Counted from the first letter of the stretch, positions 32,754-58,929 are shown. The stretch: 64,000 nt of DNA from Pocillopora damicornis (GCF_003704095.1 NW_020843739.1:186001-250000), one strand, 5' to 3'. The notes: a model not told the origin generated them from the letters alone. Program-made: numbers and translations.

Positions 32754-35700
32754 GTGGGTGAATAAACCAAGTCAAAGGTTTTTCCTGTGAAATTAATTTG
32801 ACCAAATCAAAGGAATTGAGCGAGCGTGGCACACTGAGTTGAATGGCCTCAGTTCTTTCGGCTAAATTTGGCATGTTTGGCTGAACTTGACCTTTCATGT
32901 ACTTCATGTTCTTATCTATGAAACGTATATATGATTATTAACACGCCATAAATGCTGTTTACACACGAACTTTTTTATCTCATAAATATTACAACTTCGT
33001 CGCCAACTCCAGTTATTTGAGGTCGGTTTTTGATTGAACTCAGGCCAATCAAGAGGTCAGAACTTCATTATAAGTCTAAGAAAGAAAAACCGACCGTAGA
33101 TAAGTGTTATCAGAGACCATTCCTGGACATCTGGTGACAAACAGGAATCAATTTTCGATATTTCCCAAGTTGATGATCGTGTCACAGCTTTTTCTTGTTT
33201 GAGAAAATACACATGCAATAAGTTGTTAAGAGAAGTGACAGCTGAACTAACATAAGCATCACTAAATAAATAACTACACTGCTGTTCCAGGCAATCAAAA
33301 TAAGGCAAAAACTCTTTTGATTTTTATGATTACTAACTTAACTTTGAAGTTATTCACGCAGATTTCAGTCAAAGTGTAATCAACATATTTTTTTCCCATC
33401 GAAAGAACAGACCATCATCTAGAGGCGAATCAACAGAAAATTTTCTTCTTCACTGAGCTAAATAATGAAATGAATTAGAAGTCTGAACTTCTACAAATTA
33501 TTAACCGTTCAGAGAGTACACACCTCCTGGGATGTTTAAGCACGAATTAACTCATTAATCTCTTCTTTGGCGACATCGTGTAACGCCCAAAGAAAAGGAA
33601 AAACTACTTCATGAGTTAGCATGGTTAAGCAGTCTATGCCCGAATGACCTCGTCTAGAATTGCCGTTTCAGATATGGACAATCACAAAAAGGTTTTATAA
33701 AGCAAAGTGTTTCTTATTTCTTTCTTGGCTCAGTAAGGTTAATAGGATGTTATATTCATCGGATTCATCATCTAGGGCAGCTACATATATCAGTAGAATG
33801 CTGACTCACCATGTATCATGAGTACTAGAAGTCTCCTGTTATGTTGAGTATCGGTGTAAAACATTTACATGTTCAGCAAGATCCTGTCTTTTTTGGAGTG
33901 AACTTGTTCATCGGTTTAAATAAATTCAGTGTTTATCACCGCGAGTTGCACTCACTTAGTCGGAATGTTTTAGATATTCTAGATGTTTGTTTCCTTTTAT
34001 TGAGATTTTCTGATAACAACTTGAGATGATGAGGCCCTCCTGCAATTTTCCTTTACGTTAATTTCGAATTTGTTATATGGTTTCCACCTTTGAGAATTTT
34101 ACTTACCTGGTCGACTGACTACCCGTATATGGTAGGGTATTTCAGTACTGTGAACCTAAGCTTTTTTGCTTCGTTTTGATTAAGTAGCTGCGGTGGGTTA
34201 TTTATTCAGAACCCACAGTCTCAAAGGTTATATGCGGTGAAGACATCCGTTAACAATGAAAATTAAAAAAACAGATGCGAAGACTAGTTTTGTAAACAGC
34301 GCGTGCAAAAGCAGTACTTGAATTTCAAAATAAACAAACTAGGACGATTAGTAACTCTTTTACCCGAATATAGAGGTGTTAAAAATAACAACTATACTCG
34401 AATCTGCAGGTTAGGGTGTATATCATAGTCAGGAACAGCAGCATATCTAGTGGCACTCAGTCTGACGTCACACGTTACCGGTCTGAATATCTAACTTCCT
34501 CCTTAACACACACAATGTGTCTTGGAGTTGTAAATTGGTCGACGGTAGGAGAAAATGTTTTGTCAGTCTGTTGTCACATCATCGAATATTCGCAAAAAAG
34601 GCATTTAAAATGAGTTCTACTTGTCTTAAGATATGAAAAATTCTCTGATAGTTTTCAGTACAAAGCTTTAACTTCGTGAAATAAAAGATTGAATGCAAAT
34701 GCACCATATATGGGAAAGAAATTAGTCGTCAACACAACCTCATTTAACCCAAAAGTATATCGTGAACGTGGAGATAAACGTTTGTTTGTCGAACAAAGTA
34801 AAACGAACATGGTGTTAATTAAAAGGTACTGGTAACATCTAACCTTTTGCTGGTAAGAATGGACTTCATTTATACTGTCGAGAGGAAACGCCCAGAATCT
34901 GAGGCATTCGCAAGACTTTAGATAAACATTGCCAAACAATGGACACATTGCAGTATTTTAATGATTCAGGAGCTGCCCAAAAATGGATGTGATTGGTCCA
35001 ACACCCAACATACGATACATGCTGAGTAGTGAAGAAGACACTAGTGACTTTTAATTAAGCCTTGATATATGCGCGCTTCTCAGAGTTAAATTTGCGAGTT
35101 AAGGTTTCGCGTGCATGCTCCTGAGAACCAAACGCTTTGACTGTTGCATCATTATGCTTCTACACAACTTTTGCGGGTTTAGGTGCTTGCATATTTGATG
35201 CAAGGGACGCACTATCCACGGTATAAAAGCTGCATACATCACCAATCTTACCATTCGAACTGGGACAGTTTAAAATCCAATTCTAGCAGATTAAGTCGAT
35301 CATAGAGAAAGCACTCTATGAAATACATATAATGTGCTGCTGGTGCTTGACATCTCAAAATGAGAGTTGAACTCGCAATACGTGCTTGGGAAGATTAAAG
35401 GAGTCTAAGTGGTGAGAATTGAGAACAATAGTAATTATGGTCAAATAACTTTGGGCCATTGATTACCTATATACTTATCTTTTCACATTCCATATTTACT
35501 ACTCCTCATTTTATCTTATCTCTGATCATTTGATTGCAAGTTCGTGCGAATATTTTCAATTTATTTGCAAATTGAGTTTTGACTGACGAACAGGTTGCCC
35601 ACAACATCTTCAGTTGAGGTGGAAATTATCAACAAGGAGTGAGGTTTAACGTGTACGCTTGTTAAGGCCTTTTGCTCTTACAAAGGAAAGTACTTGATTA

Positions 35701-38700
35701 ACCAAATTGGAAATTTTTCTGTGACGACGTTAAGATAAAACGTAACAAATGTAAAAAAATTGAAGTCAGTTCTGTCTAGCTGACTGATTCTAATCACTAG
35801 AAATAGCCGCAAAGCAATGAAATGCGTTCAACATCACACATTGACCGTTTTTACCACTCAGCAGTACATGTAGACAAAGATAACTCATAGATCGAGAGGC
35901 AGTGTAAATTCTTTCAACGCAAGGAATGAAAAAAAACATGGCATGTACAATCGTTGATGTTTTTGAAACGCACATTTTCGTTAAAGCCACAACTACCAGC
36001 GTTTTTCTTGCGTATGATTCTCATTTCCCTGGCCCTTGTTACTTCTTCTCTTCTTTACATCCATTATTAATAAATAATTATTATTAATAAACTACTCGAA
36101 AGAGACTACGCCATCATCGCAACACGGTTTAGAGAAGATTTCTAAAGATGAATCAGCTTGCCTTTTTGAAAAACTCAGCTAATTGAGTTGGCGGATAAAA
36201 TGCCCAATTAACACTTCACTAATGAACCAGCAATAAATAATGAATCACATTATCCTTGGTGGGAAATACAAATACATGTGGTCTCTATTTTGAACAGAAG
36301 GATTCTCGACAATGTTATATAACTAAATTAAAGAAAACTGAAACACGCGTAAAGGGGGCAAGTAGAATGGCTCAGCCAATTCTTGTTACAATGTGTACCA
36401 AAACATTCGTCTGACAACACATACTAGCTGTGAATTTATGCGCCAAAGTATCGCTGTCGCTGAGTTTTGCCCTTTTAATATCTCCCCTAAGTAAAGAGTA
36501 AATAAATCCTGCTTTGCACGATCTCAAGCTAGCCTTGCTTAGCTTTTCATCATGACGTAAACTTTCTTTTCCTCTCAATGGATAGAAGCAGATAGTCACG
36601 CATTGGATACCAATCGTCGGTGAGGAAGTGATAAGTGCAGATCAAATACATTACCCCTTTAATCAACTTTACCACATGCAGGGTTCACTTCAAAGACTTG
36701 CGCGAACGTCCATCGCCTTTTGATTAATTACAAAAGTTAAGGCAAGGTCTCGATGGCTTCAAGTTCGCACGGGTTCGAACACCACTTTGAAACTTTTTTT
36801 TACCACCCGTGGATAAGTCAACAACAAAACAAATACAGTGCTCTGTTGAACAACTGCCGTTACCTCGTGCAGGTTGTATCTTAGATAATTGCGCAAACAC
36901 TAATCACGTTTCGATAAAACTTTACCCGAGTCGATTGAGATGGTTTCAACTTCATACGGGTTGTACACTGCTGTGCCTCTTTTTTTTAATACCCGAGGAT
37001 TAACTAACAAACAGAACGATCTTGAGCATTTCTTGCTGTTGAACATCACATTCCAAACACATTTTAGGAAGATTATACTTGAGAAGCATTCTTAAAAGAT
37101 AGATACATCATTACGTCTGTTTACCTCCTACAAGGGACTTGATCTGTGATGTTAGCGACCAGTACTTTCTTCAACTGAACTTTTTCAAAGATGGTTTATC
37201 CTGCTGTATTTTGAGAGCAAAGTGAGACACCTGCCTTAAAATTCTAAGATTTTCATCAACCGAGGGGTGTTGTAATAAAGATAAGGTAACGGTTCAGCAT
37301 TTTGTGTGTTTTGGGATAGATCTTTTATAAAACAAAGAAAGATGAAACCAGCTGATAACAAAATCTGATGATGCCGTAGACATCGTGCTGTGATGAATGA
37401 AATAAGTGTCATTACTTTCTGCCTGGATTTTCTTGATAATTTTGCTGTGTCTTGTCATCTCTTTTGCAGAGCACTTCTGCGTATGATAATGGCATGTCAG
37501 AGTTAGGCATTTATCAACGTACAACAAGGTTCGACGTGATTAGAGCAACCAAGCATAGCGTTTATATTTATTCATTCCAATCTTTTTAAATCATCCTGAG
37601 TTATTAGCGTGGAACTTTCAGAATGAACTAATTTTCAGTCCATGAATAATATCTTCTTCCAAACTGAAGGTGTCTTCGAAAAAGAATCCCTTTTTATGGC
37701 AAAATTTTTGAAACGTGCATGTGCCATTATCGAGAAACTCAAGATGATTCAGAAATTATCAAGCCTAAAACTTGGACTGAAATGATAGGAACGAATAGGC
37801 CCAGTAACAAAGCATACACTATTTCAATAATATGATTTGTGAAGGGTATCCTATCATTTGGCTCTACTAGTATCTTGAGTTAGCTTTTTTTTTTGCATGT
37901 GTTCAACAATTGATATTTTACTGAGTGCAGATTACAGGACAAAACGTTATGAGAATAATTTTTCCACTGCGTGCATGTGATCCCATGTTGACTTTTGAAG
38001 CAAAAGTCACGAGATACTTTTTCTCTCAGTATATAGTGGAGGAGAATACAGTAAGTGAGACTACATTACTTCGGCTCACTGAAAGGAAGAAATGGAAATA
38101 TTCAACAAATCCCTCATTGACAGATTTGAAAATGATGTCGATTTATCATTTCTAATGATGATTTTTACTGTCAATTTCGGCAGCTGGCTGCACAAAGCCA
38201 CGAAAGTCTCAATGATGTGATCCTCCTTTCGGATTTTAGGCGATAAAATTTTAGTCAGGGGTTGATAACGGGCCAGCGTGTGTAATCGTGACTTCAACTG
38301 ATCAACTCAGGTGGCTGTCCTAGGCCCCCTCAGACTTTCGACGACCTGTTCTTATGATCTCATTACGATTATTATCTACATTAAATTGACCCTGCAACCC
38401 ACTTGATCAAGAGATACAGTATCCTATGAAAGATTTGACACCCATAAATTGTGGACTGCACACTTAAAATCATCAAGAGACCAAAGTTTATCTCAGTGGA
38501 ACAAAGCAACAAGCTTTAGGCTTAAGTTTCTTCAGAAAACGTTTGAGCCACTTTGGTCAAAGAGAGTTATCACTAGACTGATAATTCATTTTCATACGCG
38601 AGTGAATCTTAATATTACTTATGAATCATTATTAAAGAATAAACTCGAGAAACTTTGAGATGCTTTGTCCGGCAAATGCATGAGCTAAACTACGTTAGGA

Positions 38701-41700: not shown

Positions 41701-42217
41701 AGTTCGTCTTTGGTAGAACTCCTTTCGCATCCAACAGTTCGAAGACAAAACAGGTTTAAGCTGCTTTACGGAAAGGACAAAGAGCAACTATTGTAACAAC
41801 TAAGTATTGAAACAAAGTTTTGTTTATTAATTTTTGACTTTTTTGAAAAAGCTAAAACTCCCCCCAAAAACAAAAAAACATAAGGAAATAAGCAGATAAA
41901 CGTATCAAAAATTCAAAATTTGAAAAAGAAAGGGATGAATTTGCAATTCGTAGTGATGGACACAATGAACGCCGTCCCGCGGGCAAAAAGTTATGGAATG
42001 ATTTGCTCTCGAAGTTTCATGACTGGATTCGCTCAATAAAAAATTGTTTAATTAAGGTTAAAACTTCTTCTGCTCCACCGTGAGCATAGCCAAGACTTAT
42101 CATTCATCCGTACTTTTTTTCTCCTTTTAAAAGTTGATATAGAAAGTAGCACATAACTGAGCTGAAAGAGAACTTTAGAGCTCTTAAGGCTGGAAGTTCT
42201 TCCACCTTTCCCAAAGC

Positions 42218-45200
42218 TCATCCTCTGCTATTGCAGTTACTCGTTGTTAGAAAATCTTGAACCTGATAGACAAACTGGAGAAACTCGGGCAGTTTGGAGG
42301 TGATCATTTCCGGTTCCCAATCTTTACCACTGAGAGCTCGGTCCCACTCTTCTCGGCCAAGGTGGAGATCAGTCTAAAAGCAAGCAAATACGTGAAACGA
42401 CAAAAGCGTATCAAAATATCTTACAACTACTCAAGGAAATTCTTAATTCAAAGTCATCATTGTTAAGCAGAAATGGACACTTCTTGGATTTGAATATGTT
42501 CACTCCCACGATCTAACTAGTAAATCTTCTTACTGTTTGCCATACAATCTTTTGATATTACTTGGAAGAATTAAGTATTGGATCAACTTAAGGTACCCTA
42601 AACTATATTCTGATTTATTTTCATCACTTTTCTCTGCTTGATACTGTACTGATGTTGTGAGGATAAGTTCTCTTGGTCACTCATGGGAGTTAAAGGGTTT
42701 ACTCCCATGAGTGACCAAGACAGAATTTCTCCTCACAAAATCTATACAATATCAAGCAGACAAGTGATGAGAATAAAGAAAATATCAATTAGAGGATNNN
42801 NNNNNNNNNNNNNNNNNNNNNNNNNNNNNNNNNNNNNNNNNNNNNNNNNNNNNNNNNNNNNNNNNNNNNNNNNNNNNNNNNNNNNNNNNNNNNNNNNNNN
42901 NNNNNNNNNNNNNNNNNNNNNNNNNNNNNNNNNNNNNNNNNNNNNNNNNNNNNNNNNNNNNNNNNNNNNNNNNNNNNNNNNNNNNNNNNNNNNNNNNNNN
43001 NNNNNNNNNNNNNNNNNNNNNNNNNNNNNNNNNNNNNNNNNNNNNNNCCCCCCCCCCTTTCAAGCGATGAAGAATGACCGGTCCCTAAGGATGATTACTA
43101 ATGAGACCTTGGGAGTGAAAGGGTTCATGGGAAAAGGGGCCACTTGATGTTCCCGAGGAACAGAAACATCAATGCATTCCGGGCTCTGAGCATTGGCGGT
43201 TTCGACCTTATGGTTTCCTTATGACAATATTGAACATCAAGCAAGGAATATTTCTATAACTGGTTCTTACTGTTTCAGTGTTCTGTTCCCCTCTGACGTC
43301 ACTGCACCAAGTGCTTTCTTCAGAAATTATCAAAGTGAACCCCTCCCGTGGTTCATACAATGTTCGACGGGAGCAGCGCATATGGTTGAATAAAAATCCC
43401 GCCGGTAGCTCTTCTTTAGGCACATGCAATCCATCAGGTATTGTAAATGTTAACTTCCTGGACAGAAAATCAGCTAACACCTTTGTTTGCACCTCTTCAT
43501 CTCCGCTGTTATGTAATTCAATAGCTGAAACTGAAATAGATTTTTTTCAAAAATGAACCGAGATTATGGCACTCCACCGAGAAACTTATTAGTTGAAATT
43601 GGACGGAAGGGGCAGCTTCCGTCCCGTGGCCTTCTTGATCTAACAAATGTTTATTGGGGTTATAAAGAAAAACATAGCGATCATCTGTCGATTTTTCCTC
43701 CGCCAAAAGTTTCTTTAGGTTGTCCTTATTGCGGTCGAGATGAATACAGAGAAAATCCAAATCCAATCCAATCCAAGAAAATTAAACAAACCAGCAAGAG
43801 GACAAAGAAATCAGAAACTCACTTGTTTTAGGTCTTATCATGAGTCTGCAATCGACTTGGCATCCGGGAAAAATTATGTCGGCCTGGAGATATTTTTGCG
43901 ATGGCAGAACCAACCATCCTCGACATCGTGATCTGGTCAATTCATCATCGAAATGAAGTTCTTCCACAACATGTCTGACGTCATTGAATGGAATTGGAAT
44001 TTCTTCTAGTTTTGTTTGCACATCCTGGTTAGCAACCCACACCTAACAGGAGCAAGAAGGGCTGTTAGCATCAAGTGTCTTGACAATTTCAATCTGCAAT
44101 TGTTGATGTGGTTTTATCTGCCTTTGTTATCATCCGCATCCGCGCGTTGTCCAATGACGCCTTACCTGCAAGGTGGACCTTGCCCCAAGTTAAAGCGCCG
44201 TTAAGGTTCAAGCAATCTAAATTGCAAGTTTATTAACGAAGAGCCACAAATAGAAAATGTTTAGAGCAGAAAATTTAATTGCATAACGTACCCGATACAC
44301 CTTCGGATAACTCATTCTTCCAGTCAACTTACCTTACACCTTACTGATCTGCCTTGAGGTGAAATAAAACTTAGATCGTATCTTGACATGTAATCCTTGT
44401 CAGTCTTTGGTGAACCAAACGTCTCCTGTAACGAGTGTTTGCTGACTAGCACACCTCCCTTGAACGCAAGCCGCCAATTCCTCTTCTTGAGCTTGTCAAG
44501 TACCTCCTGAATATCCCATGTTTCTTCAACATCCACTGTTAATATTTAGTTGGTAATTGCTTAAGATCACGTAAAATAAAGAGTTACAGACAACAAAAAG
44601 GCGTGGTAAATTTTTCAAAAATCGGAGCTTGTAACCAATATTTTCCTTTGCTTCACTGATCTTCCCACGAATTTCCTGTAGGCCTGGGTCTTACTCGTTT
44701 CCAATTGTCTCTCTACTTTCGATAACGAGGGAAGCAGGCTTGGGGTGCACGAGGGGAAACGTCCCCTTCGTCGTACTGGTGCTGGTTCGAGCGACCTTGC
44801 GGCCTCTTATGTGACTCAAAAGACGACTGGGGATGAGTGAGGGTCTAAATGAGAAGCTGACCTGCGCGTTAACGGAGGAAAAGGGTCGTTTGGATAAGCA
44901 GTCAGTCGCAAGAGGAATAGTCGATGTATTGCACTCTGCAGGGTTCGTTTTCAACACGTCACGTGTCTCACCATACAGCGACCTGGTTTATCACGTGTGC
45001 GCACTGATCACAGCTGATACCGTCATGAAAATGGGTACTTATAGTAAGTCACTTATTCTGTTTTGTTATTTAGTTCTCACCTTCATCAGGTTCTCGGATG
45101 ATAACGGTCCCAACGTGGCACCACATGTCGGCTTCGTGAAATTTGTTTGACTCTATTCCACGCTTGATCTTTTTTAGACATTCAAGAGCATTTGCTATGA

Positions 45201-47975
45201 GGTCGTTTTGATAGCTTGGAACTGTTTCGCCTCGACTACATGCTCCTCCAAGCTGAAAAGATAGCGATCAACTGGGAAAAATTAATGAAACTCAGAAATT
45301 CAGAATCAACGTCAGTATCTGAGCAAATGCGCTCTTACCGCTCCCTTGACCCATCAACAGTCAACTAGTGACAAGTTAGGGTTAATATTGGATTAGTGGA
45401 GGGGTAGGTACGCAGTTGCTTCGATACTGACTTCGATCCGAAATTAATTTTATGACTGTGGATCACTGAATCAAATATCTCCCGCCATAAGTTATTGCAC
45501 TGTTAGATGACATATTTTTATTGTTAGGCTACTACAGTGTCTGAGTCTTCTTTGGAACTTAATATATTCAGCTCAGTTTCAAAAAGAAGCAAAAAGAATC
45601 GGAAATACACTCTGCAGTACTTCATGCGTGTCCTGACAAAAATACGAACAGAAATACTAACAAACCAATTCGTATTCCTCCGACGGTTTCAGCCGATACT
45701 GTGAATGTGATCCTGGTAACACCATGCGGTCTTCGTCTTCAAGTGGCACGAGCTTTAGTTCACAATCCTTCGGTAGATTCCTGTCGTCAACGTAACAGCA
45801 AATCTTGTCTGTTTTGATCCTCGCTGAGGCCTGTGCATGAAAAAGGGAAGAAAAAAATTGCTTCCAAAACCGTTTGTGCTTTAGTTCCTTAATGTTAGAT
45901 CAGTCATTTGATTTGAAATGCGCGGTGAGGACCAAGCTGAGAAAATAGGGCTACACGAGTTGTATGTTACTACCGTGGAAGTGAAGAGCTTCAGGTGCAA
46001 GCAAGGTTTTTACACACATCTTCTCATAATAAAAGTTCAAGAGCAACAGGAATAACCTTCAACATTTGTTAGCAGGCTATAGAGAATAGAGAACTGAATC
46101 ACAGATTTCTTTGAGACGCGGACGGGAACCGGAAGCCGAAGAACAAAATTTATTCTAGTGCACTTTGACGCCAATGTATTGACTGTTATATCGTCGTTTT
46201 AGTATTAAAAACCAAATTGTGCTGACCAAAAAGGTGTGGCGAGCACGAGCAATGGAAACTTTTAACCTCCTGCTCCCGTCTGCGTCTCAAAACTGATGTT
46301 TGTGCTTAAGCTCCCTATTGTCTTTTATCACTAAGTGTCTTTAATACAGCAAACTCTTAAGTCAACCAAGAAATTATAGTGCTTCCTAGGGGAAGACCGT
46401 CATGCTTTGATTCCATCTACGATACATTCTGGTCGTTGGGCCTGTCTTTCTGTTTGTTGCTTTGCTGATGAACCATATTTGCATAGTTGTTCTGTTACTA
46501 AGGTGTAACAATATCTTATGCGAAATAGATTAATAGGTACATACCACCCTTCCCTTCATCAGTAATTCAGCATGCTTTACTTCTTTCTCTGTTCCTTTCA
46601 GTTCAAAGAGCTTATTTCCTCGAGGAAATACTTGTGCTCCAGTCACTGTGCAAATATTACGAAGATTATCTCCTCCCTTTCCTTTCACATGCTTCTCGAA
46701 TTCACTCGGAATTTTCACAAGTTGTCGGGGATATCCCTTCCTCCCACGTTTAGTTTGGGCTTCCTCCTTTGAAAGAAAATTTTAAAATAGAGCATGTTAC
46801 GTTGGGCCTCGAAGAGTGTATGTGGTAAAACTAAAACTGTTGAGCAAATTACTGTGGGTAGCGATAGAACAAAGTGGCCAAAATAGCCAATGAGATCTCA
46901 ACATGAATACATGAATTTGGCTACAACCCTTGACACTCTTAACATAAGTATGCACATTCACAATACTCTTCTCTATAATTTTCCATTTTTACCGACGGGG
47001 ATAATTTGTTCAACAAGCAAGAGCTTATCCAGTTGGCGATCATTTCCTTTATTCTCTTTACCTCCTGGGTTTGATTCAGGGGTGATAATGGAGGGAGAAA
47101 TAAGATACTAATCACTTCTAAGCGGTTAAGGGGTGGTTTCATATTGAAGGCGGTGATGTTTTACTATGCGAGATAAAAATCTGAATTGAGTTATTCAGAA
47201 CAATAGTCCTCTCTGAGGTAAAATTTCTTATATCATATACTAACCATTCTTTGATAGATGAGTTGTTTTGCGCGTGCGCGTTGCCCCTCATTGCCGCTTA
47301 CTGAAAAGCCTCCCTGATCGCTGTCTGAAGTGATCCTTGATCCTGATTCTGTCTCTATTAACTTTATCGAACTTCCCTTCTTGCCAATCACAAAACCCAT
47401 GAGATCCTTTGGAACTGCCACGAAGTCGCAAGTTTCCCCTGTGATTCTTCCTCGGCGGTTGTCGTTGGTTGCCCCGCACCTACGACATCGACACGTATTT
47501 TTTATTAACATAAGTCAACAAGCTGATGGTGAACAGAGAGAAAAAAATTTTTACAGCTCTTATTTCTGTGACATTTCAATCTCGAGCCCTTTCCTCTATA
47601 GGGGAGAATGGGAGTGAGTGTGGGAGGGGGAGGGGGAAGGGTTTAGTGGAGCCAAGGTAAATAAAAAGACGCTGATTGATATCAGCGAGCCCGCAATATG
47701 TTATGAATATTGGTCGGAGGATTCTTTGATGCAACAGCTGTTACTTAAACATCTCAATGTGAATGTCCGCTGTAACAAAAATGTACTAGCGCAGTTAGAC
47801 GATTGCATTGAAGGCTTATTACGTTTAGAATCAAATGTTATTACATATAGGACTTTGTAACATTTAGAACCAAATGTTATTATATTTAGGACTTTATAAC
47901 ATTTTAGGAAAGTTATAACATTTAGGACTTCAACAAAGTCAAGGTAACTTGCTTGCAGACTTCATCATAACTCAT
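42218..47975 (-). CDS. Uncharacterised ~550-aa protein with two KH domains and an unknown C-terminal domain. Exons 47975-47953(?), 47479-47245, 46766-46545, 45830-45666, 45252-45081, 44535-44333, 44042-43823, 43524-43271, 42373-42218
   Basis: KH1 VAVPKDLMGFVIGKKGSSIKLIETESGSRI; KH2 VKIPSEFEKHVKGKGGDNLRNICTVTGAQV. Eight exons join in phase through GT-AG introns with no stops, ending ...LPEFLQFVYQVQDFLTTSNCNSRG*. First exon tentative (GC donor). Confidence 0.85.
44690..44845. mobile_element. Intronic MITE-like element
   Basis: Imperfect inverted ends ACTCGTTTCCAATTGTC / GACGACTGGGGATGAGT. Confidence 0.5.
45303..45439. mobile_element. Palindromic MITE in an intron of the KH gene
   Basis: GTCAGTATCTGAGCAAATGCG..TACCGCTCC pairs with GGAGGGGTAGGTACGCAGTTGCTTCGATACTGAC. 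Confidence 0.65.
46109..46292. mobile_element. MITE-like inverted repeat
   Basis: TTTGAGACGCGGACGGGAACCGGAAG pairs with CCTCCTGCTCCCGTCTGCGTCTCAAA. Confidence 0.6.
47817..47930. repeat. Minisatellite (~39-bp unit built from ACATTTAGGA-like subunits)
   Basis: acgtttagaatcaaatgttattacatataggactttgtaa / catttagaaccaaatgttattatatttaggactttataa / ... Confidence 0.75.
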
Positions 47976-48792
47976 CTCTTTGCAGAAATAGCAGAGGTCC
48001 ACACGCAGGCTTAGAGAAGGGGAAGGAGAAGGGGTGGTATGGGGCGCGGGCAGACATTGAATCATTACCGTCAAAGGTATAAACTGCCGCTCAGATGTTC
48101 TTTGTACGCTCTGGTTACGAAGCGATCGATCGGCTTTCGACCTCCTCGATGTAAAGGCTAAAATATTCCGAAAAATGAAAGTACCAACACCAACGGATTC
48201 AAAGCAATAAAAGTACTTGAAATTTAGGAAATGCGAGGTTACAACACCGTGCTCATCAGCTGCGATTACTAGCCACCGATATGAGCTCGAAGAACCTTCA
48301 AATACTTCCCTTTGAGTCCATAAATTCCTTTTCAACACTGACTCCAGACAGTTACCCAGGCCACGATATATCATATCATACCTTTTTTTCCTTGCATCTG
48401 ATCTCCTTTGAGCGTAACCACTACATTCCATTTAGCTGGATTGTTTTCCTGTTTAAAAGCAAACTGGTAGGGAAAAAAATATTCACAACTGCTAAACCGG
48501 AAGTTCTTCCGTGTTTTCCTAAATTCTCGTCACCAGTTTCCTTGCAATAATTTTCGAGGCAGCACTGGGATTTTGGTAATACTTATGAGTTAGATTATTT
48601 TGCCTGCTTTCAGTTGACGATTGCTAATCCATAAAGCGATTGAAATTTTGCCTTGTAAGAATTTTTACGAAAGAGACCGAGCTTTATTTTAAGACTGTGA
48701 GACCGACAACAGCCGAGCGATACCGAAGACAACCGACAGTTTGGGGAGTCCGACGAGAAGTGCAGGGGTTGGAGCCGGTGCGAAAAAGCAAA

Positions 48793-48800
<8 letters not shown>
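47976..48800. promoter_or_regulatory. Putative bidirectional promoter between the KH gene and TNPO1
   Basis: About 0.8 kb between divergent start codons; CpG retained; paired inverted ETS-like sites CCGGAAGTTCTTCCG at ~48497-48511; YY1-like AAAATGGCG overlapping the TNPO1 ATG. Confidence 0.55.

Positions 48801-58929
<10,129 letters not shown>

What the first reader, a model, noticed from the sequence alone, without database searches (positions are those of the whole stretch)
42218..47975. Unrecognised RNA-binding protein: tandem KH domains fused to a possible degenerate CYTH/triphosphate-tunnel domain
Seen: the ORF track shows only fragments, but 8-9 exons splice in phase into an intact ~550-aa protein with two N-terminal KH domains and ~330 aa matching no family I can name with confidence. 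Inference: the order of C-terminal elements - helix then strand ADMWCHVGTVIIR, RYDLSF, ADIIFPGCQVDCRLMIR, RCSRRTLY..GFTLIISEE, TDLHL..EWD..W.PE.I..LPEFLQFV terminal helix - parallels CYTH/triphosphate-tunnel proteins (ExExR/KxG first strand, DxRxS, RxKxRxxY, last strand ExE followed by a capping helix, as in Cet1-like RNA triphosphatases). The metal-binding glutamates are replaced (D-x-W-x-H; D-x-H). This suggests an RNA-end-binding pseudo-enzyme or an altered-chemistry enzyme coupled to KH RNA recognition.
Basis: partly seen in the sequence, partly recalled or inferred. Interest (0 to 1): 0.75.

Follow-up and report, generated by a model that had tools for sequence, protein, structure and literature searches.

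The report
Coral KH-KH protein, possible triphosphate tunnel
This is an expressed stony-coral gene for a protein with two ordinary RNA-binding KH domains and a large conserved tail that matches no named family and may be an inactive version of the tunnel enzymes that act on RNA 5' triphosphate ends.

Summary
The gene is real. On the minus strand, 9 coding exons (48431 to 42218) add up in phase to 560 codons, and every intron is GT-AG. RNA contigs show 7 of the 8 junctions. The KH exons are therefore joined to the downstream exons. The N gap lies wholly inside the last intron and hides no exon.

- The first exon is at 48431-48382, not at the ATG at 47975.
- Exon 8 starts at 43530.

Both KH domains pass Pfam's cut-off. 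The remaining roughly 390 aa match nothing by sequence: no Pfam family, no solved structure at E<=10, and hhalign against a CYTH alignment gave P 0.24.

A protein-language-model search did put Cet1-type RNA triphosphatases (PF02940) in all ten best named hits, but the score was 0.84, which counts only as a lead. The order of conserved acidic and basic strand residues parallels Cet1, with the metal-binding glutamates replaced.

The family has about 10 loci in this genome. Every named relative is a stony coral.

The scan had already noted this family on other DNA of this genome (s1-773002, s1-773034). I found no paper describing it.

The parts
48382..48431 (-). Coding exon 1 (16 codons plus 2 bases), with the ATG at 48431.
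   Evidence: Its translation is identical to residues 1-16 of P0096. Donor GTATGA, and phase 2 joins the G at 47479.
47245..47479 (-). Exon 2: KH domain 1, with the GKKG loop at residues 49-52 (47374-47385).
   Evidence: Pfam KH_1 E 2.2e-13, 50.2 bits. Joint 47244|46765 (cut +1) seen in 4 of 4 runs.
46545..46766 (-). Exon 3: KH domain 2, with the GKGG loop at residues 124-127 (46671-46682).
   Evidence: Pfam KH_1 E 2.3e-8, 34.1 bits. Joint 46544|45829 (cut +1) seen in 4 of 4 runs.
45666..45830 (-). Exon 4: a conserved beta-rich linker or subdomain (C-x-Y-I-D ... Q-Y-R-L-K-P) with no family match.
   Evidence: No Pfam hit. Conserved across the family. Joint 45666|45252 seen in 2 of 4 runs; the intron is retained in contigs of X1 and X4.
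45081..45252 (-). Exon 5: a long amphipathic helix followed by the strand D266-M-W268-C-H270-V-G (45109-45129). This strand is the candidate counterpart of tunnel strand beta1.
   Evidence: D, W and G are invariant and H is at least 90% conserved in the 17-row tail alignment. Amphipathic-strand signal. Joint 45081|44535 seen in 4 of 4 runs.
44333..44535 (-). Exon 6: a helix, then strands carrying R333-Y-D335 (44366-44383) and R347-C-K349 (44333-44341).
   Evidence: R and D are invariant; R is invariant and K at least 90% conserved. 100% identical to P0081.
43823..44042 (-). Exon 7, the most conserved exon: W351, R388-C-R390-G-W392 (43905-43928) and D413-C-R415 (43833-43853).
   Evidence: 59-66% identical to 6 intact paralogous exons in the same genome. 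pN 0.17-0.23 against pS 0.60-0.86. A profile of this exon finds only 65 proteins among 1.84 billion.
43271..43530 (-). Exon 8: a helix, then strands R474-C-S-R-R478-T-L-Y (43355-43378) and F-T-L-I-I-S492-E-E494 (43316-43339). RNA uses the acceptor at 43530.
   Evidence: Joints 43530|43823 and 43271|42373 seen in 4 of 4 runs. P0081 and P0096 carry the two extra residues that the 43530 acceptor adds.
42218..42373 (-). Exon 9: the strand T-D511-L-H513-L-G515 (42356-42373), the terminal amphipathic helix L537-F550 (42251-42292), and the stop codon at 42218-42220.
   Evidence: H is invariant and D at least 90% conserved. Helix signal. The contigs continue past 42100 as 3' UTR.
42798..43047 (.). Assembly gap (N) inside intron 8 (42374-43270).
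   Evidence: RNA contigs skip 42374-43270 as one intron in 4 of 4 runs. The gap was not filled.

Best explanation
The window encodes a 560-residue member of a multigene family seen so far only in stony corals. Residues about 30-165 form two type-I KH domains with intact GXXG loops, which bind single-stranded RNA (or DNA).

Residues about 170-560 form a beta-rich domain. I read it as a Cet1-like triphosphate-tunnel (TTM) fold that has lost the glutamates which hold the catalytic metal. It keeps conserved arginines and lysines on alternate positions of its strands.

On this reading the tail does not hydrolyse. It grips a phosphate-rich ligand, most plausibly the 5' tri- or diphosphate end of an RNA, while the KH pair holds the adjoining single strand. 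That would make the protein a reader of uncapped RNA 5' ends.

Shown: the gene model, its expression, the KH domains, the family and its constraint.
Inferred: the fold (my estimate about 0.65), loss of catalysis given the fold (about 0.6), and the ligand.
For: - Gene and expression.
- KH domains: Pfam over the cut-off twice, and the profile matches solved FUBP, Nova, PCBP and IGF2BP KH structures at E 1e-15 to 1e-11.
- Constraint: residues D, W, G / R, D / R, W / D, R / R, R / S / H are invariant over 17 tails down to 30% identity. In exon 7, pN is 0.17-0.23 against saturated pS of 0.60-0.86. Several subfamilies hold genera of both major coral lineages (quick tree).
- Tunnel lead: the 10 best named language-model clusters are all PF02940 or its clan.
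- Strand pattern: conserved polar residues alternate with hydrophobic ones exactly where the hydrophobic-moment scan calls amphipathic strands, and the protein ends in an amphipathic helix like the TTM 'plug helix' (PMC4641920 passages).
- Register with Cet1: essential Cet1 residues run acid (E305/E307), base (R393), base (K409), acid (E433), base (R454/K456/R458), acid (D471), acid (E492/E494/E496) (PMC2699512 and PMC10201420 passages). Here the conserved residues run D266/W268, R347/K349, R388/R390, D413, R474/R478, S492/E494, D511/H513. Four of the six spacings lie within 7 residues of Cet1's (the mapping is my inference).
- Precedent: trypanosome RESC1-RESC2 are Cet1-like tunnels that lack two of the three metal ligands, are judged inactive, and bind 5'-triphosphate guide RNA.
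That is a lead which I did not reproduce.
Against: - No sequence statistic supports the fold. There is no CYTH or mRNA_triPase hit in 8 exon pieces, 34 members or 10 further members at E up to 10.
- PF02940 finds nothing in the genome, though that search rang in no control genome either.
- The tail profile finds 0 PDB sequences at E<=10, and the solved Cet1, mimivirus, CYTH and RESC chains are in that bank.
- hhalign against CYTH gives probability 0.25%.
- The language-model score of 0.84 with 166 shared features is below the tool's own bar.
- A first atlas call on P0072 residues 142-530 without filters gave the family itself, oomycete KH proteins and fungal DUF7905, with no TTM.
- Two of the six Cet1 spacings are off by about 25 and about 40 residues.
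- A site this strongly conserved, with D, H, D and H on the two strands that would meet, may equally be catalytic.
- No binding or activity data exist.
Confidence: 0.42

Rival explanations
1. The tail has the tunnel fold but is an active enzyme with altered chemistry. Asp266, His270, Asp511 and His513 would hold a transition metal, or His would act as the catalytic residue. The protein would process RNA 5' polyphosphate ends, or a nucleotide or polyphosphate, with the KH domains delivering the RNA substrate.
For: The candidate site is invariant or nearly so across subfamilies at 30% identity, which is more than many pseudo-enzymes keep. A histidine coordinates Mn2+ at metal site 2 of the TTM adenylate cyclase cyaB (His-122; PMC4641920 passage). 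Known TTM activities are very diverse.
Against: Changing Cet1 E305, E307 or E496 even to Asp impairs catalysis in many TTMs (PMC4641920 passage). In this register position 268 is Trp. Position 515 is Gly in this gene and His in most relatives, so the third ligand is not conserved. The fold itself is unproven.
Confidence: 0.2
2. The tail is a coral-born domain of another, possibly new, fold. The resemblance to tunnel enzymes is a coincidence of beta strands rich in Arg and Asp. It would be a second RNA- or protein-binding module.
For: Every statistical test against known families was negative. The exon-7 profile finds only 65 proteins in 1.84 billion, with nothing recognisable outside the family. 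The language-model hit is below the tool's threshold, and the unfiltered call gave no TTM.
Against: The order of charged residues, four spacings and the terminal helix fit Cet1.
Confidence: 0.28
3. The tail is a divergent 2H phosphoesterase, which would make the protein an ASCC1-like KH + 2H fusion. (The ASCC1 architecture is recalled, not taken from a call.) The two conserved His strands, C-H-V-G and L-H-L-G, would be the two H-x-T/S motifs.
For: There are two conserved histidines, each on a hydrophobic strand, one near each end of the domain.
Against: Neither His is followed by Thr or Ser at +2 (Gly, and Gly or His, instead). No 2H Pfam family appears at E<=10 in 44 members. No 2H family is among the language-model hits. 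The domain is about twice the size of a 2H core (size recalled).
Confidence: 0.05

Closest known systems
Cet1-like RNA triphosphatases (Pfam PF02940 mRNA_triPase; yeast Cet1, mimivirus, Chlorella virus and protozoan enzymes), members of the triphosphate tunnel metalloenzyme superfamily
   Same: They are the nearest named clusters by language-model features, 10 of 10. The acid-base-base-acid-base-acid-acid order of conserved strand residues is the same, 4 of 6 spacings agree, and there is a terminal helix.
   Different: No HMM or profile match. Under this register the metal ligands E305/E307/E496 are D/W/G (H in most relatives). There are two insertions of about 25 and 40 residues. The domain is fused to two KH domains. 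It occurs in an animal, whereas tunnel RNA triphosphatases are said to be usually found only in viruses, fungi and protozoa (PMC10201420 passage).
RESC1-RESC2 of trypanosome RNA editing (Cet1-like tunnels without catalysis)
   Same: This is a working model for how the coral protein may act. RESC1-RESC2 have a tunnel with two of three metal ligands missing, judged inactive, whose basic residues bind the 5' triphosphate of a guide RNA. Their sequence also found no homologue, and only structure comparison did (PMC10201420 passages).
   Different: No sequence relation was tested or seen. RESC1/2 act as a heterodimer and, in the passages I read, no KH domain is mentioned. The coral protein's ligand is unknown.
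CYTH proteins (thiamine triphosphatase, CyaB); the coral's own copy is at G000:C847:80234-80740
   Same: They belong to the same proposed superfamily. The only hhalign path, which was not significant, pairs R-x-x-Y plus the next strand of the tail with CYTH's T-x-R-x-x-Y strand.
   Different: The coral's canonical CYTH scores 72.5 bits to PF01928 and keeps E-x-E-x-K and E-x-E. The tail scores nothing, and hhalign gives probability 0.25%.
FUBP/KHSRP-type KH proteins (one orthologue, P0072, is labelled 'Far upstream element-binding protein 3' by its source)
   Same: Both have type-I KH domains. The best solved matches are FUBP, Nova-1, PCBP2 and IGF2BP.
   Different: This protein has only two KH domains, and the 390-aa tail has no counterpart in those proteins. 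The source label rests on the KH part alone.

Membership tests
KH domain, type I (Pfam PF00013) | Profile match above Pfam's gathering score | tested here: met
   Exon 2 scores 50.2 bits and exon 3 scores 34.1 bits against a cut-off of 21.5. P0096 scores 72.8 bits with 2 stretches.
KH domain, type I (Pfam PF00013) | GXXG loop between the first two helices (feature recalled) | tested here: met
   GKKG at residues 49-52 and GKGG at residues 124-127, read from the sequence.
Triphosphate tunnel metalloenzymes (CYTH PF01928 / mRNA_triPase PF02940) | Match to a family profile | tested here: not met
   No hit at E<=1 in 8 exon pieces. No hit at E<=10 in 34 members or 10 more members. PF02940 finds nothing in the genome at E<=10, but it rang in no control genome either.
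Triphosphate tunnel metalloenzymes (CYTH PF01928 / mRNA_triPase PF02940) | Sequence or profile relation to a solved TTM, or to a CYTH alignment | tested here: not met
   0 PDB sequences at E<=10 with the tail profile A4. hhalign of A4 against the CYTH alignment A5 gives probability 0.25% and P 0.24. No Cet1-type alignment could be built, because no tool gave such sequences.
Triphosphate tunnel metalloenzymes (CYTH PF01928 / mRNA_triPase PF02940) | Topologically closed eight-stranded hydrophilic beta-barrel with a C-terminal plug helix (PMC4641920 passages) | not testable with these tools
Indirect evidence only: amphipathic strands carrying conserved polar residues, and a terminal amphipathic helix.
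Triphosphate tunnel metalloenzymes (CYTH PF01928 / mRNA_triPase PF02940) | Glutamates on the first and last tunnel strands that bind the divalent metal (Cet1 E305, E307, E496) | tested here: not met
   Under the inferred register these positions are D266, W268 and G515 (His in most relatives). The register itself is unproven.
Triphosphate tunnel metalloenzymes (CYTH PF01928 / mRNA_triPase PF02940) | Basic residues that hold the triphosphate (Cet1 R393, K409, K456, R458) | tested here: inconclusive
   R347/K349, R388/R390 and R474/R478 are invariant or at least 90% conserved, and lie in the matching order. Whether they line a tunnel is unknown.
2H phosphoesterases (ASCC1-like KH + 2H) | Two H-x-T/S-x motifs (feature recalled) and a 2H family profile match | tested here: not met
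   The motifs read C-H-V-G and L-H-L-G, and no 2H Pfam family appears at E<=10.

The most novel reading that the evidence does not exclude
Stony corals evolved and expanded a family of RNA 5'-end readers. Each is a catalytically disabled Cet1-type triphosphate tunnel, a fold otherwise described for RNA work only in fungi, protozoa and large DNA viruses, welded to two KH domains. The proteins would recognise uncapped 5'-triphosphate RNA as a non-self or processing mark. They would form an animal innate-immunity or RNA-surveillance arm built on a fold not previously tied to that role in animals.
Probability: 0.25. Interest if true: 0.8.

Novelty: new variant of a known kind. Interest (0 to 1): 0.6.

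Why it matters
If the tail is a disabled triphosphate tunnel, this would be the first animal protein family that couples such a tunnel to KH RNA-binding domains. It would also be a second case, after trypanosome RESC1-RESC2, of a Cet1-like tunnel turned into a 5'-triphosphate RNA binder.

It would give corals a candidate sensor or handler of uncapped RNA, which bears on coral antiviral defence and RNA surveillance. The family would then need a proper name in place of 'uncharacterized' or 'FUBP3'.

If the tail is not a tunnel, it is still a strongly constrained, expressed domain of about 390 residues. It is seen only in stony corals and has no detectable relative among 1.84 billion representative proteins, which makes it worth a structure.

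I found no paper on it. The full-text searches were 'triphosphate tunnel' + 'KH domain' (0 papers), 'RNA triphosphatase' + 'KH domain' + 'coral' (0), 'CYTH' + 'K homology' (1, irrelevant), 'Pocillopora' + 'KH domain' (0) and DUF7903/DUF7905 (0).

Tried and rejected
Its exon cannot supply the two bases that exon 2 needs, and P0096 begins with the 48431 exon.
- Hidden exon in the N gap: rejected.
- Pfam on exon pieces and on 44 family members: only KH families.
- Full-length profile against PDB: only KH structures. Tail-only profile: 0 hits.
- hhalign of the tail against CYTH: not significant.
- PF02940, PF25482 (DUF7905) and PF25475 (DUF7903) in the genome: nothing, apart from one unrelated 14.7-bit hit on C1278.
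- Viral contigs scanned with the tail alignment: 25 pattern matches, 0 confirmed.
- 2H reading: rejected on its motifs.
- ZNFX1 neighbour and STAT-type sites reported for paralogues by earlier notes: not present at this copy. There is no AAA_12 hit on contig C374 among the 53 matches listed, and no TTCNNNGAA between 31756 and 53984 (19 in the window against 28 expected). AAA_12 exons do lie on C3979 at 70.9 and 102.7 kb, the contig that also holds paralogue pieces at 35-36 and 75.6 kb. I did not examine them further.
- Taxa of the weak unnamed hits P0046-P0060: no names on record.
- The careful tree did not finish, so the quick tree is what I cite.
- No supplementary files of papers were opened.

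Full report
**What is there**

The ORF track shows fragments on the minus strand. Reading that strand and fixing the borders gives nine coding exons:
- 48431-48382
- 47479-47245
- 46766-46545
- 45830-45666
- 45252-45081
- 44535-44333
- 44042-43823
- 43530-43271
- 42373-42218 (stop included)

Their lengths sum to 1680 nt, or 560 codons. The phases run on without a break, and 8 of 8 introns have GT..AG ends.

**RNA evidence and the gap**

The look-up of sequencing runs listed 22 runs from 7 studies, and 5 of them are on record as RNA. I laid the contigs of X4 and X15 (RNA-Seq libraries of two studies) and of X1 and X2 (guessed to be RNA) on 42100-48050.

- Seven intron joints with CT..AC ends on the + strand were reported at my exon borders.
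- Six of these joints appear in 4 of 4 runs.
- The exon 4/5 joint appears in 2 of 4 runs. X1 and X4 carry an unspliced contig over 45081-45829, so intron 4 is retained there.
- Bins 45881-46477, inside intron 3, have zero depth in all four runs. This argues for transcripts rather than DNA.
- Single contigs of 993-1915 nt run exon 7, exon 8, exon 9 and the 3' UTR, and pass from 43271 straight to 42373.

The N run at 42798-43047 is therefore inside intron 8. No exon is hidden in it, and the frame is continuous across it. The same follows from P0081, P0096 and every aligned orthologue, none of which has extra residues there. The flanks of the gap (42498-42895 and 43095-43293) have word depths of hundreds to above 100,000. 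They are a high-copy repeat, which probably caused the gap.

One run (X1) shows an alternative acceptor at 44559. By my reading it brings in a TAA.

First, RNA uses the acceptor at 43530, not 43524. P0081 and P0096 carry the two extra residues.

Second, exon 2 starts in phase 2, so it needs an upstream exon that ends with two bases.
- P0096 is a 560-aa ORF from public transcript assemblies (26 member sequences). It is identical to the window over exons 1 and 2 and 93% identical overall (517 of 557 compared positions).
- P0096 begins with the 16 codons found at 48431-48384, followed by AG|GTATGA.
- The unitig break at 47481, and an unspliced contig over 47452-47731, fit a spliced and an unspliced form side by side. 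The junction itself lay outside the laid stretch and is inferred.

**The KH half**

Pfam KH_1 matches exon 2 (E 2.2e-13, 50.2 bits) and exon 3 (E 2.3e-8, 34.1 bits) against a cut-off of 21.5 bits. The GXXG loops are intact: GKKG at 49-52 and GKGG at 124-127. A full-length family profile finds solved KH structures of FUBP, Nova-1, PCBP2 and IGF2BP at E 5e-15 to 1e-11.

**The family**

Exon 7 and exon 8 each find 10 places in this 234-Mb, 4393-contig genome. Besides the window they lie on contigs C1395, C3979 (two places), C1005 (at least four), C2178, C4281 and C3881. Three places have in-frame stops.

An exhaustive HMM search with a profile of exon 7 from 8 copies found 65 proteins among 1.84 billion representatives. 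Most are fragments, and 55 have E<=1e-10.

Two word-indexed searches returned 32 and 41 proteins. Apart from one KH-only plant hit (Clitoria, E 2.4e-5, 7% of the query covered), every hit that carries a name is a stony coral: Montipora, Porites, Oculina, Desmophyllum, Stylophora, Pocillopora or Orbicella. The names are 'uncharacterized', 'K Homology domain-containing' and, once, 'Far upstream element-binding protein 3'.

P0081 (341 aa) is 94-100% identical to exons 5-9, exon by exon, and is this gene's own product in public assemblies.

A quick maximum-likelihood tree of 32 rows places the window's gene with Desmophyllum and Oculina orthologues. It also shows several older subfamilies, including a long-branched one shared by Orbicella and Montipora (the careful search did not finish).

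Exon 7 compared with six paralogues gives pN 0.17-0.23 against pS 0.60-0.86. The copies are old and under purifying selection.

The nearest named relatives and the assembly size suggest a pocilloporid coral. That the size matches a published Pocillopora assembly is recalled, not taken from a call.

**The tail**

I built a tail-only alignment of 17 sequences (A4). Invariant or at least 90% conserved polar residues sit at alternate positions of short hydrophobic runs. In the numbering of the 560-residue model these are:
- D266-x-W268-x-H270-x-G
- R333-Y-D335
- R347-x-K349-x-W351
- R388-x-R390-x-W392
- D413-x-R415
- R474-x-S-x-R478
- S492
- D511-x-H513

A hydrophobic-moment scan calls amphipathic strands at these places. 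It calls amphipathic helices before the first strand, at about 366-380, and at the C-terminus, 537-550. This is the picture of a sheet or barrel with one conserved hydrophilic face.

**Tests of the tunnel idea**

Negative results:
- No Pfam family other than KH appears in 8 exon pieces, 34 members and 10 more members at E up to 10.
- PF02940 finds nothing in the genome, though it rang in no control genome either.
- The tail profile finds none of 177,635 distinct PDB sequences at E<=10.
- I took the coral's own canonical CYTH gene (72.5 bits) and gathered 57 relatives, of which I aligned 29 (A5). hhalign of A4 against A5 gives probability 0.25% and P 0.24. A looser run gave the same.

Positive results, at lead level:
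- The atlas feature search of P0017 residues 40-432, restricted to named clusters with KH families skipped, returned PF02940 mRNA_triPase clusters of giant viruses and plants at ranks 1-4. It reported that 10 of the 10 best named hits share that family or clan. The score was 0.84 with 162-166 of 256 shared features.
- The tool warns that scores under 0.9 are leads, and that a third of shuffled proteins also get ten of ten.
- An earlier unfiltered call on P0072 residues 142-530 gave the family itself, oomycete KH proteins and fungal DUF7905, with no TTM.

Comparison with the literature. I read passages only, found by term search, in three papers.
- TTMs are defined by a topologically closed hydrophilic eight-stranded barrel, triphosphate substrates, a divalent metal and a C-terminal plug helix. 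Catalytically dead members such as Med18/Med20 exist (PMC4641920).
- Cet1 binds its metal through E305, E307 and E496, and binds phosphate through R393, K409, K456 and R458. E433, R454, D471, E492 and E494 are also essential or structural (PMC2699512; PMC10201420).

The conserved residues of the tail follow the same acid-base-base-acid-base-acid-acid order. Four of the six spacings are within 7 residues of Cet1's. The other two are longer by about 25 and 40 residues, at places where I predict helices. This mapping is my inference, not an alignment. Under it, two of the three metal ligands are gone (W268 and G515).

The atlas has no model of the two homologues I asked about.

Two earlier notes of this scan on other contigs of this genome describe the same family. 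s1-773002 speaks of a predicted tunnel, and s1-773034 of a ZNFX1-like neighbour with STAT-type sites. I treat the tunnel statement as an unverified lead.

**Surroundings**

The gene's start at 48431 faces a transportin-like gene on the + strand. The transportin identification is from my own reading of its N-terminal and later exon ORFs and was not tested. That gene's ATG lies about 360 bp away.

There is no AAA_12 helicase hit on this contig among the 53 listed. There is no TTCNNNGAA between 31756 and 53984. The neighbourhood reported for a paralogue therefore does not apply to this copy. Nothing recognisable lies in the 12 kb beyond the 3' end.

**Verdict**

- KH-KH plus an unassigned, strongly constrained tail is a fact.
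- 'Degenerate triphosphate tunnel' is the best available reading, at about 0.65 for the fold. It rests on leads and on a residue-order argument, not on a significant match.
- The mechanism I favour is a non-hydrolysing grip on an RNA 5' tri- or diphosphate end, helped by the KH pair, by analogy with RESC1-RESC2. It is inferred throughout.

I found no paper on such a protein.

Noticed in passing
window 48640-56300, + strand: A transportin-like (importin-beta family) gene starts about 360 bp from the KH gene's ATG, head to head. The two probably share a bidirectional promoter. The identification is by eye from the ORF translations.
   Followed up: partly
window 42498-42895 and 43095-43293: A high-copy repeat flanks the assembly gap inside intron 8. 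Summed word depth is up to about 120,000 in RNA-run contigs, with many loose ends at 42698-42782. It is the likely cause of the gap.
   Followed up: no
window 45253-45665 and 44536-44559: Intron 4 is retained in contigs of 2 of 4 runs. One run uses an alternative acceptor at 44559 that brings in a stop codon. Both forms would truncate the protein after the KH pair and exon 4 or exon 5.
   Followed up: partly
window 47729-47731 and 47541-47631: RNA contigs of all four runs carry 28 extra letters, plus small indels, in the 5' region relative to the assembly. This is a strain difference or an assembly error in intron 1 or the 5' UTR.
   Followed up: no
L021 (G000:C847:80234-80740): The coral's canonical CYTH (thiamine-triphosphatase-like) gene is a single open frame with E-x-E-x-K and E-x-E intact. 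It is a useful internal contrast to the KH-gene tail.
   Followed up: yes
P0102 (Orbicella, 696 aa) and P0089 (Pocillopora meandrina, 605 aa): P0102 repeats the first half of the tail domain in tandem. P0089 carries a C-terminal extension with a P-loop-like stretch (one member of A3 gave a weak Roc hit, E 0.014, and P0089 is my guess). Either could be a gene-model fusion.
   Followed up: no
G000:C3979 70882-71022 and 102747-102887; paralogue pieces at 35306-36313 and 75588-75768: SF1 helicase (AAA_12) exons lie within 5 kb of a paralogue piece of this family.
   Followed up: partly
atlas hits: Oomycete KH-domain proteins (397 aa), fungal DUF7905 and plant DUF7903 clusters appear near the coral tail by language-model features. 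Similar KH-plus-tunnel-like architectures may exist outside animals.
   Followed up: partly
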